A stretch of DNA of 64,000 nt from Octopus sinensis (Eukaryota): NCBI RefSeq assembly GCF_006345805.1, contig NC_043010.1, positions 66,278,001 to 66,342,000 of the forward strand. Reading direction: 5' to 3'. Made by a program: the position numbers and the translations under genes. Below the pieces are notes generated by a model, which did not search any database, was not told the DNA's origin, and saw only the letters and a program-made list of their open reading frames with translations. Of the stretch, positions 599 to 56,122 are shown in pieces (position 1 is the stretch's first letter; each line of letters begins with the position of its first letter).

Positions 599-744
599 GT
601 GAGTAGTTGATTTTATTTCCAATGATAATTTTGTTTCAGCTCATGTTGTATTGATAAGAATTGTTGATGCTGTTATTGTAGAGTACCTCCATTCTTTGTT
701 ATGCATTATTCATTCACAGGTCCGCCTGGCTGGCTCCCATGCTG

Positions 745-2885
745 GTGGCACATAAAAAGCACCATCTGAACGTGGCCAATGACAGTACCCCCTGACTGGC
801 TCCCGTGACGGTGGAACATAAAAAGCACCATCCGAACGTGTCCGATGACAGTACCCCCTGACCGACTCCCGTGATGGTGGCACATAAAAAGCACCATCTG
901 AACGTGACCAATGACAGTACCCCCTGACTGGCCCCCATGACGGTGGCACATAAAAAGCACCATCTGAACGTGTCCGATGACAGTACCCCCTGACTGGCTC
1001 CGTGACGGTGGCACATAATAAGCACCATCTGAACACGTGGCCGATGATAGTACGCCCTGACTGGCTTCCGTGACGGTGGCACATAAAAAGCACCATCCGA
1101 ACGTGTCCAATGATAGTACCCCCTGACTGGCTCCCGTGACGGTGGCACATAAAAAGCACCATCTGAACACGTGGCCGATGACAGTACCCCCTGACTGGCT
1201 CCCGTGACGGTGGCACATAAAAAGCACCATCCGAACGTGTCCGATGACAGTACCCCCTGACTGGCTCCCGTGACGGTGGCACATAAAAAGTACCATCCGA
1301 ACGTGGCCGATGACAGTACCCCTTGACTGGCTCCCGTGACGGTGGCACATAAAAAGCACCATCCGAACGTGACCGATGACAGTACCTCTTGAGTGGCTCC
1401 CATGCCAGTGGCACATAAAAAGCACCATCTGAATGTGGCCAATGAAAGCACCTCCCGACTGGCTCCCATGACAGTGGCACATAAAACGCACCATCTGAAC
1501 GTGTCCGATGACAGTACCCCCTGACTGGCTCCCGTGACGGTGGCACATAATAAGCTCCATCTGAACACGTGGCCGATGACAGTACGCCCTGACTGGCTTC
1601 CGTGACGGTGGCAGATAAAAAGCACCATCCGAACGTGTCCAATGATAGTACCCCCTGACTGGCTCCCGTGACGGTGGCACATAAAAAGCACCATCTGAAC
1701 ACGTGGCCGATGACAGTACCCCCTGACTGGCTCCCGTGACGGTGGCACATAAAAAGCACCATCCGAACGTGTCCGATGACAGTACCCCCTGACTGGCTCC
1801 CGTGACGGTGGCACATAAAAAGTACCATCCGAACGTGGCCGATGACAGTACCCCTTGACTGGCTCCCGTGACGGTGGCACATAAAAAGCACCATCGAACG
1901 TGAACGATGACAGTGACAGTACCTCTTGAGTGGCTCCCATGCCAGTGGCACATAAAAAGCACCATCTGAATGTGGCCAATGAAAGCACCTCCCGACTGGC
2001 TCCCATGACAGTGGCACATAAAACGCACCATCTGAACGGGGCCTATGACAGTACCTCCTGACTGGCTCCCATGCCGGTGGCACATAAAAAGCACCATCCG
2101 AACGTGACCGATGACAGTACCTCTTGAGTGGCTCCCATGCCAGTGGCACATAAAAAGCACCATCTGAACGTGGCCAATGAAAGCACCTCCCGACTGGCTC
2201 CCATGACAGTGGCACATAAAACGCACCATCTGAACGGGGCCTATGACAGTACCTCCTGACTGGCTCCCATGCCGGTGGCACATAAAAAGCACCATCTGAA
2301 TGTGGCCGATGACAGCACCTCCTGACTGGCACCCATGACAGTGGCACATAAAATGCACCATCTGAATGTGGCCAATGACAGCACCTCCCGACTGGCTCCC
2401 ATGACAGTGGCACATAAAACGCACCATCTTAACGGGGCCTATGACAGTACCTCCTGACTGGCTCCCATGCCGGTAGCACATAAAAAGCACTATCTGAATG
2501 TGGCCGATGACAGTACCCCTTGACTGGCTCCCATGACAGTGGCACATAAAACGCACCATCTGAACATGGCCAATGACAGTACCTCCTGACTGGCTCCCAC
2601 GACGGTGGCACATAAAAAGCACTATCTGAACGTGGCCGATGACAGTACCCCCTGACTAGCACCCGTGACGGTGGCACGTAAAAAGCACTATCCAAATGTG
2701 ATCAATGCCTGGGCCGCTTGACTGGCTCCTGTGCCAGTGATATGTAAAAAGCACCATCTGAACGTAGCTAATGACAGTAATCCCTAACTGGTTCCCATGC
2801 CAGTGGCATGTAAAAAGTACTATCCGAATGTGATCGCTGCCAGGGCTGCCTGACCGACTCCTGTGCCAGTAGCATGTAAAAAGCA
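745..2885. repeat. About 32 copies of a 66-bp minisatellite with higher-order structure, in a UBLCP1 intron
   Basis: Unit GTGGCACATAAAAAGCACCATCYGAACGTGKCCRATGACAGTACCCCCTGACTGGCTCCCRTGACG; starts at 745, 811, 877. Confidence 0.95.
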
Positions 2886-5005: not shown

Positions 5006-5042
<37 letters not shown>

Positions 5043-5047
<5 letters not shown>

Positions 5048-5359
5048 CGGTGGCACATAAAAAACACCATCCGAGCGTGGCCGTCTGCCAGCCTCGTCTG
5101 GCACCTGTGTCGGTGGCACATAAAAAACACCATCCGAGCGTGGCCGTTTGCCAGCCTCGTCTGGCACCTGTGTCGGTGGCACATAAAATCACCCACTACA
5201 CTCTCGGAGTGGTTGGCGTTAGGAAGGGCATCCAGCTGTAGAAACACTGCCAGATCTGACTGGACTGGTGCAGCTTTCGGGCTCCCCAGACCCCAGTTGA
5301 ACCGTCCAACCCATGCTAGCATGGAAAGCGGACGTTAAATGATGATGATGATGATGATG

Positions 5360-5391
<32 letters not shown>

Positions 5392-5720
5392 TATATATAT
5401 ATGTGTCGGTGGCACATAAAAAACACCATCCGAGCGTGGCCGTCTGCCAGCCTCGTCTGGCACCTGTGTCGGTGGCACATAAAAAACACCATCCGAGCGT
5501 GGCCGTTTGCCAGCCTCGTCTGGCACCTGTGTCGGTGGCACATAAAATCACCCACTACACTCTCGGAGTGGTTGGCGTTAGGAAGGGCATCCAGCTGTAG
5601 AAACACTGCCAGATCTGACTGGACTGGTGCAGCTTTCGGGCTCCCCAGACCCCAGTTGAACCGTCCAACCCATGCTAGCATGGAAAGCGGACGTTAAATG
5701 ATGATGATGATGATGATGAT
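5043..5720 (+). mobile_element. Two tandem copies (period 359) of an RTE-type 3' end with (GAT)n tail
   Basis: 5043-5360 and 5402-5720 appear identical, each with 63-bp GGCACATAAAA modules and a CCAACCCATGCTAGCATGGAAAGCGGACGTTAAATGATGAT end. Confidence 0.85.
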
Positions 5721-6301
5721 ATATATATATATATAATAGTATTTGATGATGTAAATGGTTCTTTTTTCCTTCTTAGACAATTATAGAGTTTGAGAGTACT
5801 TGAGCAAAGACAACATCAGGTTGAGGAAACTGTTTAACCTTGTTATAGACATAACAACCACAATCAAAATACACCCGGTACACCCTGTGATTTGGTTAGG
5901 GATAAAAAAGGGCATCAAGGCACAAAAACCAAGCAAAAAATTAAATGAGGGAGAGAGAGAGACACATACACACACACAGATGTGGTCCTCCAACTTGGCT
6001 ATGAGAGACGTTGTTCTAAATAACAACAAACTCAGACTGTAGTTAGGGTACAGGGTACAAGGCTAGCAATTTCAACTAACTACCTGTCCAACCCATATCA
6101 GCATGGAAAATGTATATAAAATGGTGATGATGATGAAGTTAGAGGAGACGGAGAATAGTAGCCGAGACTTTTGTTAAGCCTGCCTGCTTGGACAAGTGAA
6201 ACCAATGCGGCCAACATCCAACCTGACCATCTGCACACAAAAGAATTATAATTCTATGCTATATGAGCTTATTTGAACGTTATTATTGTATTTCCTTTCA
6301 G

Positions 6302-11158: not shown

Positions 11159-11735
11159 CGTATGTGATGGCTATCCACTCGTGACTGAGGAAGACTATTG
11201 CTGACCTTCAGGAACATCGTGCACTCTAGGACTAACTTATATTTTGCATTTGCGGCTCTGTTGGTGGCTAAAGGGCCCTGCTCTTCACAAGCATACACGA
11301 TTGCAAACAAAGCTTTCCCCATCACTACACTAGCAGTGCGCTTTCGAGCAGCACGCTTAAGTTCTTCATGCAGAATACGTGCTCTCTCAAAAGTGTCGAA
11401 CCCCGCTCCTTAACCTGCTTCCTCCATCTGTGGTGATGACAGGTATTGCTCTCCTAGTCAGTCTCCTACATATCAAAGGCCTTTAATGAGGACTTGACGC
11501 AGTCCTTAAATCACAACCTTGGTTTCTGCCGGGGTCTCTTTCCATTCACAAGTTCTCCGTATAGCATCTGCTTAGGGATCCTGCTATCCTTCATTCTAAT
11601 AAGGTGTCCAGTCCAACATAACTGGTGCTTGTGCACCATCTCCTCAATAGCCAAGATATCAGCTGTCCTCAGGACCTGTGTGTCTGGAGTTTTTAATGTC
11701 CAGCCAACATTCAGAATGTGTCTCAGACATCTCTG
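11159..11735 (-). mobile_element. RTE/BovB-like LINE ORF2 3' relic
   Basis: HQLCWTGHLIRMKDSRIPKQMLYGELVNGKRPRQKPRL is a typical RTE post-RT motif; stops follow. Confidence 0.85.
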
Positions 11736-12330
11736 ATGAAAGCGTGTATGTATGTACATATATACACACATATACATATCAACTGTTATACGTACTCATT
11801 TTCCGACTTTATATATGTATTAACTTTTACAAGGAAAAGATTAATAACTTCGAAGTTTTGGCTTGCTCACTTGTATCAGATTATCTGATACTGGTAAGCA
11901 AGTGAAACCTTTCATGTCCTAGTTACTATCGGCCTCTCCTTCATAAAATTTAATAAATATGTGCTCTACTTAAAAATAGAATAATCCTTAAACTTAACCC
12001 ATTAGCATTTAATCTGGCCATATCTGACTAAAATATTCTACCTGTTTTATGTTGAAACCATATTGATCAGGCTTCTCACAACTACCCTACAATATCGGTT
12101 TAGAAATAAACAAGCACATTATATTAATTTTGAAGCTACAAGATAATGTATGATTAATTCAAAACAATGTGAACAAGAGCATTCAGAGAGCACAAACCTC
12201 TGCCGAGGCAACACCAACGTCCTCTTATCGATTAGCCAGAGATGATTTTTAAAATGAGAATATCTGAAATAAACTCGACTGCTCTCACAAACAAGAATAC
12301 TTAAAAACAACCTGACCGCTCTCAAAAATT

Positions 12331-12541: not shown

Positions 12542-13335
12542 AATTAGCATTACACTTGACAGAGTTATCTGATTGCTAAATTCGGGTCAAGTTGGAAAAG
12601 AATAGCACTATTAAGACGATTAGAAGCGCATTGTGACCAGTGATGTAAAACAGGCATCAATGGTCTCGTTGATACTGTGAGACCGTGATGTATTTATACA
12701 CAACACAGTCACACTAACATATGTATCATCATCCTCTTTTCAATATTTGCTTTTCCATGTTTGGAAGGATCAGGTGAAATTCATTAAGACAGATTTTCTA
12801 TGGCTAGATGCTCTTCCTGTCACTAAACCTCACCTGTTTTCAAGTAAGGTAATATTTCCCCTTGACCAGACACATTCTCATAGATATTGTAACGGAATGG
12901 CACTGCTTGTATGATGGTGACACTTGCTTACAACTATTACACAATGTTAAGACAACAAAACAAACACACACTTTTATATATATATATATATATAATATGA
13001 GGGAATATTATTCCAAACTTACAGGGAAAAATTCAATTTAGAAATACTAAATCAAATTTCACAAAATATAATATATATATAAAAATTAGAATAAAACCAC
13101 CTTTCATCAATTCAATTATGAAAAATTAAATTGTTCCATTTAGAAAAATTACATATTATAGAAAGATTAAATATAAGATAAAACATACAACAGTGATTAA
13201 GTAATGTGCAAAATAATAAATATATTTGGTATATATATATATATATGGTGCCCCAGCATGGCCTCAGCCGGATGGCTGAAACAAGTAAAAGAGTAAAAGA
13301 GTATATTATATATACACACACACACACACACACAC

Positions 13336-28762: not shown

Positions 28763-29021
28763 CCCTTTAGCATTTAAACCCCAAATATTGTACCTGTCCT
28801 TTGTTCAAGCTGACCTGATCCAGCCTCTCATACCTGCCCTACAATGTCATTCTAAAAATGAAAAACTGCATGATTGAAATCATGAAACTATGAGGAAAAG
28901 CATGATGCATGATTAATTCAAAACAATCTTTTACTTGTTTCAGACATTAGACTGTGGCCATGCTGGGGCACTGTGAATAATTAAGTATAACATTTGTCAG
29001 AATAATCTGAATGTTAAAGAG
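28763..29021. mobile_element. piggyBac-type MITE, family 2
   Basis: TTAA|CCCTTTAG ... TTAAAGAG|TTAA. Confidence 0.7.
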
Positions 29022-29130
29022 TTAAAAGTTAATGAGTTTTGTGTGTCAACTTTGTAAAAATTTGAATAGTTTTGACAAAAAAAAATATATCAGACTCTAT
29101 TTGTTGTTTTGTTTTTTTTTTCTTTTTAAG

Positions 29131-30306
29131 GCTCCTTGGCTCAGAGAAGTCGCCCATGCATGACAGTGGTGTTTACGGCTCACTCGGCAAGCAGATGTAT
29201 CCTCAGGGAAGTATGATGCAGAATTACAAAGCAATCCGCTGCAAAGTGTCTCACTGTACCCTCTGCGGAAACACTTTTGCACAGAGTTTGTTCCATAAAG
29301 ACCCAGGACGTCCTTCGGCCAGCGAAAAGCACTGCGAATCTTGTCGAAAGGAGATAATTTTGCGGAATTACCATCGGCCCCATCGCAGCCAGCCTCCCCC
29401 GACCCACATGCATTTGCCTCACCTTCCTACCAATTTATCACAGCTTTCTCAGCGCATGTCCCAAAACAGTTGCTGCAACAACAGCAATGGCAGCACTCCT
29501 AATAGCAGCAACAACAACACTAACAATAATAACAATAACAACACAACAGAAGACATAATATTTCTAACGCCAACGGTCGCAATGGAGTTGGTGACAGTTC
29601 GATGGGAAATTCTTTAGTGAATCCTTTACCAACAAAACCACAACAGCAGCTCCCCCATGCTGATCACACCCCATCACCACCACCACCTCAGCATCCAACG
29701 CCGCCGACATCAACAACCACTGCTCTACCACCACCGCCGCCACCGCCATCATCATTGTCATCGACGCCGTCACCAATATCTCAGGTCATGATGCCAGCAG
29801 CACAGTCTTCAAAACCCAGCCCGTTTCCGAGCAAGTTCTTTCACTGCGACATTTGTGGTCGTGCTTTTGCACTGATAGGCAACATGCAAAAGCACAGGAA
29901 ACTACACTCAGGGGAGAAACCATTCCCGTGCGAGGTCTGTGGCAAAACCTTCGGCCTCCGCGGCAACCTACAGAAGCATCGGATTATCCACACTGGCGAA
30001 AAGCTGTTCCAGTGCAACGTCTGCGGCAAGGCTTTTGCCCTTCGCGGCAACATGGAGAAACACAAAATCATTCATACAGGACTGAAACCGTTTAGTTGCG
30101 AGATCTGTGGCAAAGAGTTTTCACTCCGAGGCAATCTTCAGAAACATAAAATCATCCATTTATCTGACAGTGTCCGCAACATTTCTAGCCGTAAACCTTT
30201 CCACTGTGATATATGTGGCAAGAATTTCTCTCAGAACCACACTTTGCAAAGCCATCTGCAATCCATACATGGATCAGATACCTGTCAAGTGTCTTGTCCT
30301 AGTTAA
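29131..30306 (+). CDS. C2H2 zinc-finger protein exon (5 fingers, Asn- and Pro-rich N-terminal part), with an apparent 1-nt frameshift near 29543
   Basis: Long T-rich acceptor ending AG 29129-29130; in-frame ATG 29156; ORFs 29072-29617 and 29602-30306 join if one A is added in the AAC run; fingers CxxC-x12-H-x3/4-H at 29845-30270 with SGEKP/TGEKL/TGLKP linkers; TAA 30304-30306. Confidence 0.88.
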
Positions 30307-37987: not shown

Positions 37988-38280
37988 GTGGAGGCGCAAT
38001 GGCCCAGTGGTTAGGGCAGCAGACTGGCAGTTGTAGGATCGCGGTTTCGATTCCCAGACTGGGCGTGTGTGTTTATTGAACGAAAACACCTAAAAGCTCC
38101 ACGAGGCTCCGGCAGGGGGTGGTAGTCCCTGCTGTACTCTTTCACCACTCTTTCTCTCTTTCTTCTGTTGGCCTGCTCGCTTAGCCAGCGGGGAGGCGTC
38201 GTTCGAAGGCTAAAACAATGCGAACGCATTGTGACCAGCGATGTGTAGCAACATCTGATGGTCTGGTCGGTCACGTGATA
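37988..38280 (+). mobile_element. SINE with family-B tRNA head and a different tail
   Basis: GTGGAGGCGCAATGGCCCAGTGG...GGTTTCGATTCCC head; tail TGTGACCAGCGATGTGTAGCAACATCTGAT also seen reversed near 61600-61710. Confidence 0.8.
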
Positions 38281-38678
38281 TATATGTGTAGGTGCAGGCG
38301 TGAGGGAGTAGTAAGAAGTTTGCTTCCCAACTACATGGTTCTGGTTTCAGTCCCACTGTACAGCACCTTGGTCAAGGGTCTTGTACTATAGGCGCAGGCC
38401 AACCAAAACATTGCAAGTGGATTTGGTAGACAGAAACCGAAAGAAGCCCATCATATGTATATGTGTGCGTCTGTGTGGTGTTGGTGTGTTTACATCTTTG
38501 TAACTTAGTGGTTTAGCAAAAGAGATTGATGGAATAAATACCAGACTTAAAAATATAAGTTCTGGAGTCGATTCATTTGACTAGAATTCTTCAAGGAGAT
38601 GCCCCAGCATGGCCATAGTCTAATGACTGAAACAAGCGAACGATAAAATATATATATGTGTGTGTGTGTCATTTCATA

Positions 38679-39472: not shown

Positions 39473-40665
39473 CTAGCAGTATCGCCCGGCGTTGCTCGGG
39501 TTCGTTTCGACCCTTTAGAATTGGAATTTTTGAAAAGTAAAAATTTTGCATTATTGCAACAACAGTTCCCTATAACATTCTACAACTTCTCAGAACTCAG
39601 ATTAATTCTTCAGCAAATACTGCTGAGATTGAATATTCTTTCCTATGCGCAACCCCTCAACATCTAATTCCAATATCTACGCTTCCAGATAGGAGATTTC
39701 TGAAGTCAGCTGTCGAAATTTGAAACAAACATGAAGAGACTGTCACAAGAAACATCTTGGCCAAAAAAGAAACCAGATTTTAAAAACTTGTCTGCATAAA
39801 CATCTTATGTCACGCATGTCACTGGAAATGTAGAGGACCAATGATTGATCCACTGGAATCTTATGACCATTGATGTAGTTATTCCCAGACCGGGCGTTGT
39901 GAGTGTTTATTGAGCGAAAACACCTAAAGTTCCACGAGGCTCCGGCAGGGGATGGTGGTGATCCCTGCTGTACTCTTTCACCACAACCTTCTCTCACTCT
40001 TACTTCCTGTTTCTGTTGTACCTGTATTTCAAAGGGCCGGCCTTGTCACTCTCTGTGTCACGCTGAATATCCCCGAGAACTACGTTAAGGGTACACGTGT
40101 CTGTGGAGTGCTCAGCCACTTACACGTTAATTTCACGAGCAGGCTGTTCCGTTGATTCGGATCAACTGGAACCCTCGTCGTCGTAACCGACGGAGTGCTT
40201 CCATATTCCCAAATACATTACATAACACACACACACACATCTCCACATTTCTATTCTGCTGTATCAGTCAGACTATCAGATGTTGTTTTATGACGAAAGA
40301 GCGAGACCTCTGAGATATGTTGTGACTGCGAAGACCTGACAAATGAAACTGAGCACTGTATACAATAATTTCATTATTATTATTTTTTTATGGTTGAAAT
40401 ACACCGAAAAATGGCGACACAGCAGTCAAAAAATCGTAAAAAATAGAGATTTTTCATAGAAAAAAAGCACCTTTTTGATGTAAATAATTTTTGGTGTTAA
40501 CACGGTCCGATCTGAATTTTTTCTTCTACGGAAGGAAGAGCAAGCCTTCTTCTATTATACTCTCAATTTTGGTCAACTTGAGCCGCAGGGTCTCAGAGGA
40601 AATAGTGTTAGTTGAAGGCTACCAAACCTGTCACACACAGACAACTTCAGCTTTATATATATAGA
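39473..40665 (-). mobile_element. Non-autonomous Helitron interrupted by a SINE-B
   Basis: Minus strand: A|TC 5' end, subterminal hairpin CCCGAGCAACGCCGGG, CTAG|T 3' end. Confidence 0.75.
39881..40203 (+). mobile_element. SINE family B, 5'-truncated
   Basis: Reverse complement of the 14371-14690 body. Confidence 0.88.
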
Positions 40666-40864
40666 TTCAAGAGGAAGGAGGCTAAAGTTTGTGAAACAAC
40701 GGGCTCAATCTGGAGATTAGTTTCTTTTTCCGCCTTCCCTCATTCCACCTTTTGCTTTCACCTTTCTCTCGCTTTTTCTTAGACCAATGTTCTTTTCTCA
40801 GTTTTTCAGATAAGACCAACCAGAGCCATGCTGAGGGCACCACCTTGAACAATTTTAGTCAAAT

Positions 40865-40982
40865 GCTTACGGCCATATCATGTTGAAAACACCGGTTCTC
40901 GTCCTATCACTGAAGTTAAGCAACGTGGAGCCTAGTTAGTACTTAGATGGGTGACCGCTTGGGAAACCTAGGTGCTGTAAGC
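40865..40982 (+). rRNA. 5S rRNA copy, solitary, probably retroposed (pseudogene or SINE head)
   Basis: 118 nt GCTTACGGCCATATCATGTTGAAAACACCGGTTCTCGTC...GTTAGTACTTAGATGGGTGACCGCTTGGGAAACCTAGGTGCTGTAAGC; helix I GCTTACGGC/GCTGTAAGC pairs fully; no T4+ Pol III terminator follows. Confidence 0.93.
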
Positions 40983-41368
40983 GTCACACACTTTGAGACT
41001 GATAGAATAAGTACTAGGCTTACAAAGAATAAGTCCTGGGGTCGATTTGCTTGACTAAAGGCGGTGCTCCAGCATGGCCGCAGTCTGAAACAAGTAAAAG
41101 AGTAAATGAATCAATCCCAGAATTTATATTTTTTGAATCTGGTATTTATTCTATCAGTCTCTTTTGCTGAACCACTAGGTTACAAGTCAGAGGTGGGGGA
41201 CAAACACACATGCATATATATATGATGGGCTTCTTTCAGTTTCCATCTACCAAATACCATGTGTATTCAAGTATGAGGGATTGCCTTGAGACACAAGACA
41301 TGATATATAAATATGCCAAACTATTGTGTTCCCACTGCATGAAACTGTTGGTAGCTCATTTTTAAATT

Positions 41369-44316: not shown

Positions 44317-44592
44317 TTTTCTGTGGCAGATTTTACCCATTTGTTTTCCTCATGGCTTCCACTATTTCATTATCCTTGGACTCACTGGATTTTCTACAAG
44401 TCATGTACTTTTAAAACATTTTTTTTTTCTTCCTTTCATAAGAAAACACTTCACCCTCTGCGTGTGCTCACATCTGTCACATTCCGTTTGCCTTCCCATG
44501 TGCATCACCTAACTTCATTTCTTTTACCAGTTCCTCACCATACTAAAGACATTTCTTCCAACCTCCTTGGACTTTCTGCCAGTGTTATGTAA

Positions 44593-44780
44593 TCTCTTTC
44601 TATATATAAAGCTGAAGTTGTCTGTGTATGGCAGGTTTGGTAGCCTTCAACTAACACTATCTCCTCCGAGACCCTGCGGCGCAAGTTGACCAAAATTGAG
44701 AGTATGATAGAAGAAGGCTTGCTCTTCCTTCCATAGAAGAAAAAATTCAAATTGGACCATCTTAACACCAAAAATTATTC
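44593..44780 (+). mobile_element. 5' fragment of the Helitron family at 39473-40665
   Basis: Reverse complement of about 40485-40665. Confidence 0.75.
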
Positions 44781-51614: not shown

Positions 51615-52194
51615 GTAAATTCTAAAATTATCATATATGTTGCTAAAGTACCAGTTCTCTCGAATGCTGTGTTTTTTTCACCCCCCAAACCGTCCCCCGA
51701 CTTAGCACCAACCTCAAGTTGTTTACAGATTTATGAAAAAAGAGACAACAAAAACATTCAATTTCCGAGTTTATTCCTACCCATAGGTGTCCTGTTTTTA
51801 CATTTTAACTTCATTCCGTAATCGACCTGTTGACATATTGCACTTTATTCCCCAAGCATTTAATCTACAGGGTCGAATATAGTCGAATTCGTTGAATACT
51901 TTCTCAAGTCTTTCATTTTCTCGCTGATGAAACTATGTCGACCCTCCATTTTGTAACCACACTACACATGTCTTAACATATTTATACTGAATATCTCTCT
52001 CTCCCCCACCAGCAAAATATATTCACACTGTTTATATAGTATCATATACGTTCTGCATTTTTGTTCTTACTTACGCAATGTATTCTCATGATCATTTTGC
52101 ATTTCGTATTATTTTTAACAATTTTATAGATTTTTGTTTTGCATGATATCAAATTACTTCGTTTGCTGTGATACTTAAATGCCTCTAAGATATT

Positions 52195-53232
52195 TGTGTG
52201 TGTGTATATGTATGTATGTGTGTATAAATATATATATATATATGTATGTATGTATAAATATATGTATGTATAAATATATGTATGTATAAATATATGTATG
52301 TATAAATATATGTATGTATATATATATATATATGTATGTATGTATAAATAAATATATATATGTATGTATGTATAAATAAATATATTTATATATGTATGTA
52401 TGTATAAATATATATATATATGTATGTATGTATAAATATATATATATATGTATGTATGTATAATATATATATATATGTATGTATGTATAAATATATATAT
52501 ATATGTATGTATAAATATATATATATATGTATGTATGTATAAATATATATATATATATGTATGTATGTATAAATATATATATATGTATGTATGTATAAAT
52601 ATATATATATGTATGTATGTATAAATATATATATATGTATGTATGTATAAATATATATATATGTATGTATGTATAAATATATATATGTATGTATGTATGT
52701 ATAAATATATATGTATGTATGTATAAATATATGTATGTATGTATATATATATGTATGTATGTATAAATATATATGTATGTATGTATAAATATATATATAT
52801 GTATGTATAAATATATATGTATGTATGTATAAATATATATATGTATGTATGTATAAATATATATATGTATGTATGTATAAATATATATATGTATGTATGT
52901 ATAAATATATATATGTATGTATGTATAAATATATATATGTATAAATATATATATGTATGTATGTATAAATATATATATGTATGTATGTATGTATAAATAT
53001 ATATATGTATGTATGTATGTATAAATATATATATGTATGTATGTATAAATATATGTATGTATGTATGTATAAATATATGTATGTATGTATAAATATATGT
53101 ATGTATAAATATATATGTATGTATGTATAAATATATATATATGTATGTATGTATAAATATATATATATGTATGTATGTATAAATATGTATATATGTATGT
53201 ATGTATAAATATATATATATGTATATTATATA
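52195..53232. repeat. 1-kb compound (TATG)n/(TA)n minisatellite
   Basis: Repeating GTATGTATGTATAAATATATATAT with variable lengths. Confidence 0.95.
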
Positions 53233-53425
53233 AACACACACACAAATATATATTTATATATAGATATTGTAATATTTTATTTATCTATCTATACACACAA
53301 TCGCAAATACGTTATCAGATGGCAGCGTGATGTTAATTTTTGTGGGTTTCGATTTTCACTTTCCAAATTTCAAGAATCAACAAAAAGGAAATAACGATAT
53401 ATTATTTATATGTGATACACATACA

Positions 53426-53475
<50 letters not shown>

Positions 53476-54224
53476 CACACACACACACACATATATAATA
53501 TATATATATATGTATGTATATGTCTGTGTGTGTAAACATTTTGTGCGAGTATTTTTGTGTATATGTGTGTTAATATGTTTGTGTTAGAATATAATTTTAC
53601 ATGTGTGTGTGTGTGTGTGTGTGTATATATAAATACACCTCTATATGTATATATGACTGTATATATTACTGTATATTCCAAGCAAAAGATATTTACAAAT
53701 AAATGTAAATATTTAGATAACGATAGAGCCACGCACTCGATCGCTATACCAGCTAAAAATAACAGCTGAGATAGCCTTCAACTCGTTACTCTACTGTTAA
53801 GGTAAGAATAAATTGAAAGGCCCTTTCATCCCTGATATGCTTAGTCAGAACTGATAGACAAGAGCGATAAGAAACACATACATGTGTGTATGTATGCGTG
53901 TGTTTAGTGCTAACCCACCAAACTCTTGGTCATTGAATCACTCTGCTACTTCACTCAAATTTTAAATATCCATCTATCTATTTATCTGTTTGGTGATGCA
54001 CACGGGGAAAAATAGAATTCAAAACGAGTATATAAATATTTTTAAAAATATGACTGAAGTAGTAGTTACTCTATGGCCAACAGTATATATATATATATAT
54101 ATATATACGACTTAATACTCCGTTCTATGTTTATGCAAACGTAGATATGTAGAAATAATCAACTATATTGTAAACCACTGTGTGTGTGTGTATGTATTTA
54201 TATATATATGTGTATATATATATA

Positions 54225-54560
54225 TATATCTATATATTATATATATAATTGTGTGTATGTATTTATATATATATATAAATATATATGTATATAATTGTGT
54301 GTATGTATTTATATATATATATAAATATATATGTATATAATTGTGTGTGTGTATGTATTTATATATATATAAATATATATGTATATAATTGTGTGTGTGT
54401 ATGTATTTATATATATATAAATATATATGTATATAATTGTGTGTGTGTATGTATTTATATATATATAAATATATATGTATATAATTGACTCTGTGTGTGT
54501 GTGTATGTATTTATATATATATAGATATATATGTATATAATTGACTGTGTGTGTGTATGT
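54225..54560. repeat. About 44-46 nt AT-rich VNTR
   Basis: Repeating ATAATTGTGTGT..ATGTATTTATATATATATAAATATATATGTAT. Confidence 0.85.
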
Positions 54561-55737
54561 ATACACATATATATTCGTGCATACACGTATATTTACTCAC
54601 AAATATTTGATGGAATCATCATTTTACGCCTGATTTCAGTGTGGGCATGGGTTAGACAGATTGTTATGTTCCGAGTCTTACTATATTGTAAGCCGCTGCT
54701 TTCTATGGACTGTCTTTAGTTGTCATTTAGTCTGGTTTCTACGGCTGGATGCTCTACCTACCACCGACCACTTTACAAATTGTGCTGGATGTATTTTTTT
54801 GTTTTTTTGGTTGCACCAGATTTAGAGATATTGTCTTGCTTACCAACCACTCTTAGAGAGTAGAGAGGGCTGGGATACGACTCCACCATGGCACCAGCAC
54901 AGGAGGAGTCGCTTTGTACACAGAGAATATATAGAAAGTACTCAGCTTAAGAAATGTAGACTGTAGAAGGGAATTGGGGAAGAAAACGATGACAGGAGGA
55001 AATCCAGAAACAGGTCGGGGAGAAGGGTAAGGACATGAGTGTGGAGTTCTTAATATCCTAAGACACGTGCATTTTTGTTTTACGAGGCTGAAGAAAGGAA
55101 TTGGAAACTAAAACGATGATATCAGAAAGACAGAAATGGGTGGATGAACCCTTTAGTGTTCACATTATTCTGCCAAAATTAACGCTTCTTCATCTACATT
55201 GTTTTGAATTAATCATGCATTACCTTGTAGCTAAGAGATTCTGATGAGGTAGCTGTTAATTTTTAAAACAATATTGTAGGGTTGGTGTGAGAGACCAGTT
55301 CTGGCCAGTTTGAACATAAAACAGGTAGAATATTTTTGGCCGGATATGGCCGGTTTAAATGCTAATGGGTGAATGTAGCACGAGTATGATGAATATTATT
55401 TGGGTAGCAGGCTGGAGGGCAGTGACTGGTACATGACAAGATGGGGAGAAAAATAAGGGTGAGTGATGAGACGGTTGCAAAAGTAAGAATGTACAGTCAG
55501 TTATTAATATATTCATACAAATAACTCATCTAAGTTTATATATGTATATATACCACACATAAATAATTGATTATATATACTGGTATGGCTGTGTGGTAAG
55601 AAGCTTGCTTCCAAACCACATGGTTCTGGGTTCATTCCCACTGCATGGCACTTTGGGCAAGTATCTTGAACTATAGCCACGAGCTGACCAAAGCCATGCG
55701 AGTGGATTTGATAGACAACTTCTGAAAAAAGCTCATC

Positions 55738-55785
<48 letters not shown>

Positions 55786-56122
55786 GTATTTGTCCCCATT
55801 GCTTAACAACCAATGTTTGTGTTTACATCCCTATAACTTAGTGGTTTGGCAAAAGATACTAATAGAATGAATACAAAGCACAAGTCCTGGAGTCAGTTTG
55901 TCTAAAATCCTTTAAGATTGTGCTCTACCATGGACAAGTAGAATATGTATATCTCTTATGATAAATATATATATATATATATAGACAAATCAAAAATAAG
56001 ACCAAAAGCAGGAAAAACAATAAAAATCAAAAGGACGTACACAATGAATTTATTTAGATTGATTCTCAGAGAAAGTTTAAGATTGGCAAAAAGAAGGGGT
56101 GTGATGTGTTATGCTTTACAAT

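What the first reader, a model, noticed from the sequence alone, without database searches (positions are those of the whole stretch)
40855..41108. Full-length 5S rRNA fused to a SINE 3' tail and inserted as one unit (SINE3-like chimera)
Seen: a complete 118-nt 5S (40865-40982) is followed, after a 12-nt linker GTCACACACTTT and with no T-run terminator, by the 3' 110 nt of SINE-A in the same orientation (GAGACTGATAGAATAAGTACT...CTGAAACAAGTAAAAGAGTAA). The cassette splits an older antisense SINE-A (TTTAGTCAAAT|GAATCAATCCC) with AAAT on both sides. Known: 5S-headed SINEs (SINE3) exist in some fish and insects and use a LINE-shared tail; template-switch chimeras of Pol III RNAs also occur. Inference: this is either a one-off 5S/SINE template switch or a member of a 5S-derived SINE family, which I do not recall being described in octopods.
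Basis: partly seen in the sequence, partly recalled or inferred. Interest (0 to 1): 0.8.

Follow-up and report, generated by a model that had tools for sequence, protein, structure and literature searches.

The report
5S rRNA fused to SINE tail
A complete copy of 5S ribosomal RNA joined to the last 112 bases of a common octopus SINE was pasted as one 243-base unit into an older SINE; it is a known kind of retrotransposition by-product, and whether it has also founded a new 5S-headed SINE family could not be settled here.

Summary
Window 40865-40982 is a full-length, nearly intact 5S rRNA (Rfam 103.9 bits). A unique 12-nt linker, GTCACACACTTT, follows. Then come the 3' 112 nt of the window's abundant SINE ("SINE-A"), in the same orientation. 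Removing 40865-41107 restores an older antisense SINE without gain or loss, so both parts entered in one event. Neither part has its own target-site duplication, and both show similar light decay. The most likely mechanism is that a LINE reverse transcriptase primed on a SINE-A RNA tail, copied 112 nt, then switched to the 3' end of a Pol III 5S transcript and copied it to its 5' end. This is the chimeric-retrocopy architecture known from U6/L1 and 5S/L1, and the way 5S-headed SINEs such as HaSE3 and the 5S-tRNA DeuSINEs are thought to arise. No second copy was found in 218 kb of Octopus DNA (53 SINE-A tails) or in the other searchable collections. No whole octopus genome could be searched, so one-off (about 0.55) versus family member (about 0.3) stays open. 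This copy has lost the tail's conserved hairpin. A 2026 O. vulgaris repeat annotation lists four undescribed "5S" SINE consensus families. I rate it a new member of a known kind, of moderate interest.

The parts
40793..40864 (-). Left piece of the host: the 3' part of an older, diverged antisense SINE that the cassette interrupts.
   Evidence: The reverse complement of the joined flanks aligns colinearly with the sense copy at about 38395-38650; blastn of the flanks.
40861..40864 (.). AAAT, the host bases immediately 5' of the insert; first copy of a possible 1-4 nt target-site duplication.
   Evidence: Read directly. The related host-subfamily copy has TAGTCAAATGAATC with a single AAAT.
40865..40982 (+). 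Full-length 5S rRNA copy of 118 nt, starting at +1. It is nearly intact but has G41T in loop C and a broken helix III pair. It is a retro-copy, not a gene.
   Evidence: Rfam RF00001, 103.9 bits, model 1-120. It deviates at 1 of 67 near-invariant columns of 22 distinct eukaryotic 5S sequences. Best identity to any of them is 106/118.
40983..40994 (+). Linker GTCACACACTTT of unknown origin. It ends in TTT exactly at the junction with the SINE tail.
   Evidence: Unique in the window. It is not part of any of 13 aligned SINE-A copies, which have ...GGCAAAA before GAGAC. It does not resemble the trailers of 33 native 5S genes, which have a T-run at or within 1-2 nt of ...GTAAGC (one has ATTCTCTCTTTT).
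40995..41106 (+). The 3'-terminal 112 nt of SINE-A, a 5'-truncated copy in the same orientation as the 5S. It belongs to the TAGG/CCTGG subfamily and carries a 7-8 nt deletion that removes the conserved CAGTC-AAAT-GACTG hairpin.
   Evidence: blastn and MAFFT against window and Octopus copies. It differs from the consensus at 4/112 positions, of which 2 are subfamily markers and 2 are CpG>TpG. It is the only one of 39 tails that lacks the hairpin.
41104..41107 (.). Second AAAT. This is either a duplicated target site or the normal end of the SINE tail (GAGTAAA) plus T, so the duplication is 0-4 nt and ambiguous.
   Evidence: The SINE-A consensus ends ...AAAAGAGTAAA(GAGT)n; read directly.
41108..41287 (-). 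Right piece of the host antisense SINE (its body and 5' side), continuing exactly where the left piece stops.
   Evidence: Alignment of the joined flanks to the copy at about 38395-38650; blastn of the right flank.
41129..41134 (+). TTTTTT in the host flank. This is the first run of four or more T after the 5S start, where a Pol III transcript started from the 5S internal promoter would be expected to end, at about 265-270 nt.
   Evidence: T-run scan. That it acts as a terminator is inferred from the known Pol III termination signal.

Best explanation
This is a single LINE-mediated retro-insertion of a chimeric cDNA. A reverse transcriptase that normally copies SINE-A RNA began at the SINE-A 3' tail by target-primed reverse transcription, at a nick inside an older antisense SINE. 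It copied 112 nt and then, instead of continuing into the SINE body, switched template to the 3' end of a Pol III 5S rRNA transcript. It copied that transcript to its 5' end (+1), and the cDNA was joined to the target. The 12-nt linker is most simply the 3' trailer of that particular 5S transcript, ending in its oligo-U (...AAGC GUCACACAC UUU), or else filler from an extra template jump. The product is a non-functional 5S retro-pseudogene with a SINE tail. It is most likely a one-off by-product rather than a propagating element. Shown here: the anatomy, the single insertion site, the similar decay of both halves, and the occurrence of 5' truncation in this SINE. Inferred: the template switch itself, the origin of the linker, the identity of the LINE, and single-copy status.
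For: (1) One gap. Deleting 40865-41107 restores the host SINE colinearly, with no bases lost or gained, and there is no separate duplication around the 5S or the tail. (2) An RNA origin for the head. The 5S starts exactly at +1 against host DNA and is full length. (3) The tail ends at the normal SINE-A 3' end and is 5'-truncated. Tail-only truncated copies of about 50 nt at 13247-13297 and 28922-28972 show that this machinery often stops early. (4) Similar age. The tail shows 2 CpG>TpG changes and 0 other changes against its subfamily consensus over 112 nt. The 5S shows 1 change in 67 near-invariant columns, plus CG>TG-type differences at positions 17 and 47 relative to its nearest relatives. 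(5) The 5S differs from other eukaryotic 5S sequences partly by compensated pairs (CCTAG/CTAGG, CTTAG/GCTTGG) and keeps all but two standard pairs. It therefore copies a genuine, recently functional 5S rather than an old diverged SINE head. (6) TTT sits exactly at the 5S-side/SINE junction, as expected if the RT landed on the oligo-U end of a Pol III transcript. (7) No second copy was found. There is 1 5S among 21 SINE-A tails in the window. There are 0 5S and 0 junctions among 32 tails in 154 kb of O. vulgaris, O. sinensis and O. bimaculoides DNA. There are 0 junction matches in the metagenome, viral and prokaryote-genome collections, and 0 junction-spanning proteins. (8) The architecture matches chimeric retrocopies and the proposed origin of HaSE3 and the 5S-tRNA DeuSINEs by a switch from a SINE RNA to 5S rRNA (PMC3272025; PMC4824008; PMC11838501).
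Against: Single-copy status is not shown. No octopus genome could be searched, and the collections that were searched hold almost no octopus DNA; the junction-peptide search found only 2 SINE-A ORFs in 5.8 billion proteins. A true one-off should be rare per 64-kb window. The 12-nt linker is longer than the few untemplated bases usual at template jumps, and none of 33 native 5S genes from other eukaryotes has such a trailer. Human 5S/L1 chimeras are mostly antisense and truncated, unlike this sense, full-length copy (PMC11838501). The target-site duplication is at most 4 nt and could be zero. The O. vulgaris annotation lists four '5S' SINE consensus families.
Confidence: 0.55

Rival explanations
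1. The cassette is one copy of a propagating 5S-headed SINE family (SINE3 type). In this reading, a master locus carrying 5S, linker and SINE-A tail is transcribed by Pol III from the 5S internal promoter, reads through because there is no T4 terminator, and is retrotransposed because it ends in the SINE-A tail recognised by the partner LINE.
For: The architecture is that of HaSE3, which has a 5S head plus the body and tail of a tRNA SINE (PMC3272025). Boxes A, IE and C are essentially intact. There is no run of four or more T inside the unit, and the first is 22 nt past its end. The linker is easy to explain as part of a family consensus. Meeting such an element in a single 64-kb window is more likely if copies are numerous. 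The O. vulgaris repeat annotation lists a SINE class '5S' with 4 consensus families covering 9.83 Mb, or 0.35% of the genome, which would predict about 220 bp per 64 kb (PMC13282606). SINE3 families are known to have arisen many times (PMC10886601).
Against: No second copy or linker-bearing fragment occurs among 53 SINE-A tails in 218 kb of Octopus DNA. The 5S head is almost canonical and shows no evident family-specific divergence. This copy lacks the tail hairpin present in 38 of 39 tails, so it is not itself a good master. The published '5S' class may be 5S rDNA arrays: its 7 'recent insertions' average 6 kb each. Type 1 promoters are thought to depend on upstream context (discussion in PMC3272025).
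Confidence: 0.3
2. These are two independent insertions. A 5'-truncated SINE-A, with 12 nt of filler at its 5' junction, inserted first, and a 5S retro-pseudogene later landed exactly at its 5' boundary, or the events happened in the reverse order.
For: Nested insertions are very common in this window; the cassette itself sits inside an older SINE. The 9-mer GTCACACAC of the linker occurs only once more in the window, 353 nt upstream at 40630. That would suit templated filler made during repair of a 5' junction.
Against: The second insertion would have had to hit the exact boundary nucleotide. There is no duplication flanking the 5S alone (AAAT on the left, GTCA on the right) or the tail alone. 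5S RNA has no tail that a tail-specific LINE could recognise. Both parts share orientation and a similar level of decay.
Confidence: 0.07
3. The junction was made at the RNA level before reverse transcription, for example by RNA ligation of 5S RNA to a cleaved SINE-A RNA, as RtcB does for U6/L1. Alternatively, it is an assembly artefact.
For: RNA ligation is experimentally supported for U6/L1 chimeras (PMC6789731, abstract listed). The resulting DNA would look the same as after a template switch.
Against: RtcB needs a 2',3'-cyclic phosphate end, which is typical of U6 and not known for 5S (my knowledge, not tested). The 12-nt linker is not explained by this route either. An assembly artefact would not reproduce a precise nested structure with an uninterrupted host.
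Confidence: 0.08

Closest known systems
HaSE3 of Helicoverpa armigera and related lepidopteran SINE3 families
   Same: A 5S rRNA head with boxes A, IE and C is fused in sense to the body or tail of a co-resident tRNA-type SINE (HaSE1) that uses a LINE-type, non-poly(A) tail. The proposed origin is a template switch from the SINE RNA to 5S rRNA (PMC3272025; PMC10886601).
   Different: HaSE3 is a demonstrated multi-copy family found in several species, each copy with its own target-site duplication. Here only one copy is known. The head is almost identical to a canonical 5S, a 12-nt linker is present, and only 112 nt of the SINE is retained.
Chimeric retrocopies of small Pol III/snRNAs with LINE or SINE 3' ends (U6/L1, U3/L1, 5S/L1; Buzdin-type chimeric retrogenes)
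   Same: A small RNA at the 5' side is joined to a 5'-truncated retroelement that ends at its normal 3' end, and the whole is integrated in one event. Each chimera is an independent, non-propagating product (PMC11838501; PMC4758252).
   Different: Those are made by mammalian L1 with poly(A) tails and 7-15 bp target-site duplications. Human 5S/L1 chimeras are mostly antisense and truncated at loops C or D, whereas this one is sense and full length. The 3' partner here is a SINE with an (AAAGAGT)-type tail, and the duplication is at most 4 nt.
SINE3 of zebrafish and the 5S-tRNA DeuSINEs (AmnSINE1 and relatives)
   Same: They have a 5S-derived Pol III type 1 promoter head on an element mobilised through a LINE-related tail. 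[quoted passage not shown]
   Different: Those are old, diverged, high-copy vertebrate families, and their heads are partial or diverged 5S. Here the 5S is complete and nearly canonical, and no family has been demonstrated.
The 'SINE / 5S' class in the 2026 Octopus vulgaris repeat annotation
   Same: Same genus and the same nominal class: 4 consensus families covering 9.83 Mb (PMC13282606, supplementary table S1).
   Different: The class is only a line in a table. No sequence or structure is given, and the mean of 6 kb per 'recent insertion' suggests that at least part of it is 5S rDNA arrays. Whether any consensus carries this junction is untested.

Membership tests
5S rRNA (Rfam RF00001) sequence | Full-length match to the covariance model above the gathering score | tested here: met
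   103.9 bits against a gathering score of 38, model positions 1-120 of 120, with only two non-standard pairs.
Functional 5S rRNA gene | Universally conserved residues intact, and a T-run terminator at or near the 3' end | tested here: not met
   G41 of loop C, invariant in 22 of 22 distinct eukaryotic 5S sequences, is T here. Of 33 native genes, 32 have a run of four or more T at or within 1-2 nt of ...GTAAGC, whereas here GTCACACACTTT follows and there is no T4 until 41129.
SINE (SINEBase definition, PMC3531059) | Short (<1 kb) interspersed repeat | tested here: met
   A 243-nt unit embedded in unrelated sequence. 'Repeat' is addressed in the next row.
SINE (SINEBase definition, PMC3531059) | [quoted passage not shown] | tested here: inconclusive
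   One copy in 218 kb of Octopus DNA containing 53 SINE-A tails. No whole octopus genome could be searched. This sample excludes only densities of about 1 per 50 kb or higher.
SINE (SINEBase definition, PMC3531059) | At least 60% identity to tRNA, 5S or 7SL RNA over at least 60 nt | tested here: met
   106/118 identity to the nearest 5S genes; Rfam match.
SINE3 (5S-derived SINE) | 5S-derived head retaining the internal promoter (boxes A, IE, C), followed by a body or tail shared with a LINE or another SINE | tested here: met
   The box regions are conserved in the alignment with 22 5S sequences. The tail is shared with SINE-A. The partner LINE was not identified; the one LINE fragment examined has an unrelated 3' end.
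SINE3 (5S-derived SINE) | Independent copies sharing the same head-to-tail junction, each with its own flanks and target-site duplication | tested here: inconclusive
   No second junction was found in the window, in 154 kb of other Octopus DNA, or in the metagenome, viral and prokaryote collections or protein databases. These hold too little octopus DNA to decide.
SINE3 (5S-derived SINE) | Pol III transcription of the element | not testable with these tools
   This needs small-RNA or total RNA-seq, or a Pol III transcription assay. All that can be shown here is the absence of an internal T4 terminator.
Chimeric retrocopy by template switching (U6/L1-type) | 5' part is a small RNA copied to its 5' end; 3' part is a 5'-truncated retroelement ending at its normal 3' end; same orientation | tested here: met
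Chimeric retrocopy by template switching (U6/L1-type) | One target-site duplication flanks the whole chimera, with none around either part | tested here: inconclusive
   AAAT lies on both sides, but AAA may be the end of the SINE tail, so the duplication is 0-4 nt. No part-specific duplications exist, and the host is restored exactly when the unit is removed.
CORE-SINE / octopus OR-type SINE (identity of SINE-A) | tRNA-like A and B boxes plus the conserved CORE domain | tested here: inconclusive
   The heads show TGGCTGTGTGGT...GGTTCAGTCCC and a CCTTGGGCAAGT motif resembling the CORE domain (the resemblance is recalled from memory). ARAGORN calls no tRNA in the window. Octopus SINEs are reported to be mainly tRNA-Core and tRNA-Deu (PMC8967140).

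The most novel reading that the evidence does not exclude
The cassette is a member, or the founder copy, of an undescribed and recently born 5S-headed SINE family in octopods. It would have been created when 5S rRNA was grafted onto the tail of the dominant octopus CORE-type SINE, giving a second and independent Pol III promoter type riding the same LINE machinery in a genome famous for its SINE expansion.
Probability: 0.3. Interest if true: 0.5.

Novelty: new member of a known kind. Interest (0 to 1): 0.35.

Why it matters
As a one-off, it is a clean invertebrate example, not made by L1, of a reverse transcriptase switching from a SINE RNA to 5S rRNA. That event is exactly what has been postulated, but rarely caught young, as the birth step of 5S-headed SINEs (HaSE3, DeuSINEs). 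It shows that the octopus SINE/LINE machinery does this. If copies with the same junction turn out to be numerous, it would be the first characterised SINE3-type family in cephalopods and a dated example of promoter swapping during the octopus SINE expansion. Either way it has little functional consequence for the locus. It is a repeat nested in a repeat, about 10.5 kb downstream of a C2H2 zinc-finger ORF.

Tried and rejected
(1) Searching for the junction elsewhere.
- A degenerate pattern, 5S 3' end + 4-24 nt + SINE-A tail start, gave 0 hits in the metagenome contigs and 0 in the prokaryote genome contigs.
- The 5S 3' end alone gave 0 hits in the viral contigs.
- These collections are not octopus genomes, so the negatives are weak.

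(2) The protein route to the junction.
- A 35-aa ORF at 40947-41054 spans the junction.
- It is not on record, and the first attempt was rejected because the query was too short.
- A 61-aa version with the stops mended found only two ordinary SINE-A ORFs, one from O. vulgaris.
- The search against 1.84 billion representative proteins gave 0 hits.

(3) The orthologous empty-site test.
- The only real gene in the window, a C2H2 ZNF at 29072-30306, has no hit above 71% identity.
- No orthologous locus could therefore be fetched, and the cassette also lies just beyond the 10-kb flank limit.

(4) More octopus DNA. My last protein search, with P0062 as the query, returned only vertebrate and insect ZNFs. 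It was a wasted call that ended this route.

(5) The idea that the linker is a typical 5S trailer. None of 33 native 5S genes with the same termini shows such a trailer; nearly all have an immediate T-run. A variant or dispersed source gene remains possible.

(6) The idea that the linker is SINE-A sequence. Only a 5-6 nt GTCAC match exists 27 nt upstream in one subfamily, which is not the tail's own subfamily. I rejected this as chance.

(7) The partner LINE. The LINE ORF2 C-terminal fragment at 11511-11777 (-) has an unrelated 3' end, so the partner was not identified.

(8) Covariation support for the tail hairpin. 95.7% of cells are paired, but there is only one compensatory change, which is not distinguishable from the shuffles. 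MFE z = -1.74. I treat the hairpin as a conserved inverted repeat only.

(9) The permissive Rfam scan of the window gave only microsatellite-driven miRNA noise.

Full report
**Observation**

- cmscan against Rfam finds one match that reaches its family's gathering score in the 64-kb window: 5S_rRNA at 40865-40983 (+). It scores 103.9 bits against a gathering score of 38 (E = 1.1e-21) and covers model positions 1-120 without truncation.
- blastn confirms that this is the only 5S in the window.
- The complementary ends GCTTACGGC...GCTGTAAGC place the mature 3' end at 40982, giving 118 nt.
- The 12 nt GTCACACACTTT follow at 40983-40994. The linker with its junction to the tail occurs nowhere else in the window, even with 2-3 mismatches allowed.
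- About 20 copies of SINE-A match, and every match begins exactly at 40995.

**What SINE-A is**

- Full-length copies carry a head with tRNA-like A and B boxes (TGGCTGTGTGGT...GGTTCAGTCCC). Next come a CCTTGGGCAAGT motif reminiscent of the CORE domain, an internal (TA/TG)n microsatellite, and a 3' region ending in (AAAGAGT)-like repeats.
- ARAGORN does not call the heads as tRNAs.
- An ORF read through the tail matches a 'hypothetical predicted protein' of Octopus vulgaris.
- The tail is common in DNA fetched from O. vulgaris and O. sinensis (30 copies in 98 kb) and rarer in O. bimaculoides (2 copies in 56 kb).
- The window is therefore octopod, probably from the O. vulgaris group.
- The literature describes octopus SINEs as mainly tRNA-Core and tRNA-Deu types, accompanied by expanded RTE-type LINEs (PMC8967140; PMC9115989).

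**One insertion, not two**

- The flanks of the cassette are the two halves of one older antisense SINE of a diverged subfamily.
- Joining 40864 to 41108 gives ...TAGTCAAAT|GAATCAATCCC.... This is colinear with another copy of that subfamily at about 38395-38650. The single-base gap in my alignment is an artefact of starting the right flank at 41109.
- A 243-nt unit (40865-41107) therefore fills a single clean break.
- AAAT lies on both sides. Because the SINE-A tail normally ends ...GAGTAAA, the real target-site duplication is somewhere between 0 and 4 nt.
- Nothing resembling a separate duplication flanks the 5S alone or the tail alone.
- The 5S starts at its +1 nucleotide directly against host DNA. 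That marks an RNA copied to its 5' end, not a piece of a 5S gene array.

**Age of the two halves**

The tail:
- Against a consensus of 31 tails, it differs at 4 of 112 positions.
- Two of these are markers of a subfamily shared with other copies (TAGG, CCTGG). The other two are CpG>TpG changes.
- It also has a 7-8 nt deletion.

The 5S:
- I compared it with 22 distinct eukaryotic 5S sequences recovered from metagenome contigs that have the same helix-I termini.
- It differs at only 1 of 67 near-invariant columns, G41T in loop C.
- It has one broken helix III pair (ACCG>ACTG).
- Several of its other differences are compensated pairs (CCTAG/CTAGG, CTTAG/GCTTGG). These are genuine lineage-specific features of a working 5S rather than decay.

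Both halves therefore look like lightly decayed copies of similar age. This fits co-insertion and argues against an old, diverged SINE head.

**Mechanism**

- The same tail also occurs as bare 5'-truncated stubs of about 50 nt, at 13247-13297 and 28922-28972. Reverse transcription therefore starts at this tail and often stops early, as expected for target-primed reverse transcription by a tail-specific LINE.
- The simplest account of the cassette is that the enzyme copied 112 nt of a SINE-A RNA and then switched to the 3' end of a 5S transcript, which it copied to its 5' end.
- This is the architecture of chimeric retrocopies (U6/L1, U3/L1, 5S/L1; PMC11838501).
- It is also the step proposed for the birth of HaSE3 in Helicoverpa (5S plus the body and tail of the tRNA SINE HaSE1; PMC3272025) and of the 5S-tRNA DeuSINE heads (PMC4824008; PMC4758252).

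**The linker is the least explained part**

- It is not SINE-A sequence. Thirteen aligned copies have ...GGCAAAA before GAGAC.
- None of 33 native 5S genes examined has such a trailer. Thirty-two have a run of four or more T at, or within 1-2 nt of...GTAAGC.
- The linker ends in TTT exactly at the junction. An RT landing on the oligo-U end of a Pol III transcript would leave this.
- I therefore favour a source 5S copy whose terminator lies 9 nt downstream (...AAGC GTCACACAC TTTT).
- An extra template jump is the alternative. Double jumps are documented (PMC2104539, abstract listed).
- GTCACACAC occurs only twice in the window. The other site is 353 nt upstream, at 40630, inside another repeat. 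The expected count is 0.55 per window, so this proximity is unexplained.

**Can this copy move again?**

- There is no T4 terminator inside the unit, and the first lies 22 nt beyond it, at 41129-41134. A Pol III transcript from the 5S internal promoter could therefore include the whole tail.
- The boxes A, IE and C look intact.
- The tail's deletion, however, removes a perfect 5-bp inverted repeat (CAGTC-AAAT-GACTG). That repeat is present in 38 of 39 tails and forms a hairpin in the MFE fold of the consensus tail.
- One old copy carries a compensated stem, CAGCC...GGCTG. Overall covariation is not distinguishable from the shuffles.
- By analogy with stringent-type LINE/SINE pairs (Kajikawa and Okada 2002, cited), such a hairpin is a likely recognition element. 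On that inference, this copy is probably immobile now.

**One-off or family?**

I could not search an octopus genome. The evidence I could gather is as follows.
- The window has 1 5S among 21 tails.
- 154 kb of O. vulgaris, O. sinensis and O. bimaculoides DNA has 0 5S and 0 junctions among 32 tails. Rfam also finds no 5S in 129 kb of that DNA.
- There are no junction matches in the metagenome, viral or prokaryote-genome collections and no junction-spanning proteins.
- This excludes a very dense family of about 1 copy per 50 kb or more. It does not exclude hundreds or a few thousand copies.
- On the other side, the 2026 O. vulgaris repeat annotation lists a SINE class '5S' with four consensus families covering 9.83 Mb (PMC13282606).
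- The seven 'recently active insertions' of that class average 6 kb, which looks like 5S rDNA arrays rather than SINEs. No sequences are given.

I put one-off chimera at about 0.55, family member at about 0.3, and other readings at about 0.15.

**Comparison and novelty**

- The unit is not a functional 5S gene. An invariant residue is mutated and there is no terminator.
- It meets the structural criteria of a SINE3-type element and of a template-switch chimeric retrocopy.
- The copy-number criterion that separates a SINE family from an RNA pseudogene, at least 100 copies (SINEBase, PMC3531059), remains untested.
- I found no paper describing a 5S-derived SINE or a 5S/SINE chimera in cephalopods.
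- It is best filed as a new member of a known kind. It is a tidy, young, non-L1 example of the event thought to create 5S-headed SINEs.
- A single genome-wide junction search would decide its status.

Noticed in passing
window 40630-40638 and 40983-40991: The 9-mer GTCACACAC of the linker occurs only twice in the 64-kb window. The second site is 353 nt upstream of the linker, inside another repeat. The expected count is 0.55 per window. This could be chance, or a hint that the filler was templated locally.
   Followed up: partly
window 29072-30306 (+): A C2H2 zinc-finger coding region is split into two overlapping ORFs in different frames (29072-29617 and 29602-30306), which suggests a frameshift, an intron or a pseudogene. 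The best database hits are only 69-71% identical (Logan transcript-sized contigs). No close orthologue was found among the annotated O. vulgaris, O. sinensis or O. bimaculoides proteins.
   Followed up: partly
window 725-2832; also 5017-5735: There is a large 66-bp-period minisatellite of 31.8 copies with 86% matches, which produces long spurious ORFs on the minus strand. A related 63-bp unit is duplicated within a 359-bp tandem repeat at 5017-5735.
   Followed up: partly
window 13247-13297 (+) and 28922-28972 (-): These are bare stubs of about 50 nt of the SINE tail, 5'-truncated copies. The first carries a doubly compensated version of the tail hairpin (CAGCC-GGAT-GGCTG instead of CAGTC-AAAT-GACTG).
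   Followed up: partly
window 52000-56000: This is a very AT-rich block (GC 26%) with strong positive GC skew (+0.24). It is built of TA/TG-type microsatellites and gives 350-400-aa 'YIYIH' pseudo-ORFs at 52042-53245. It is also the source of many spurious sub-threshold miRNA hits in the permissive Rfam scan.
   Followed up: no
window 11511-11777 (-): This is a C-terminal fragment of a LINE ORF2-like protein (...LCWTGHLIRMKDSRIPKQMLYGELVNGKRPRQKPRL). Its 3' end is unrelated to the SINE-A tail, so it is not the SINE's partner.
   Followed up: partly
window 40500-40660 and 44535-44771; 38011-38274 and 39743-39997: Two further unclassified dispersed repeat families are present, with shared ORF fragments (...FFFYGRKSKPSSIILSILVNL... 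and ...FRCFRSINTH...). The first lies just upstream of the cassette.
   Followed up: no
loci L034-L038 compared with the window: SINE-A tail density differs sharply between species. It is 30 per 98 kb in the O. vulgaris and O. sinensis samples, 2 per 56 kb in O. bimaculoides, and 21 per 64 kb in the window. This suggests the window comes from the O. vulgaris group and that much of this SINE's expansion is lineage-specific.
   Followed up: partly
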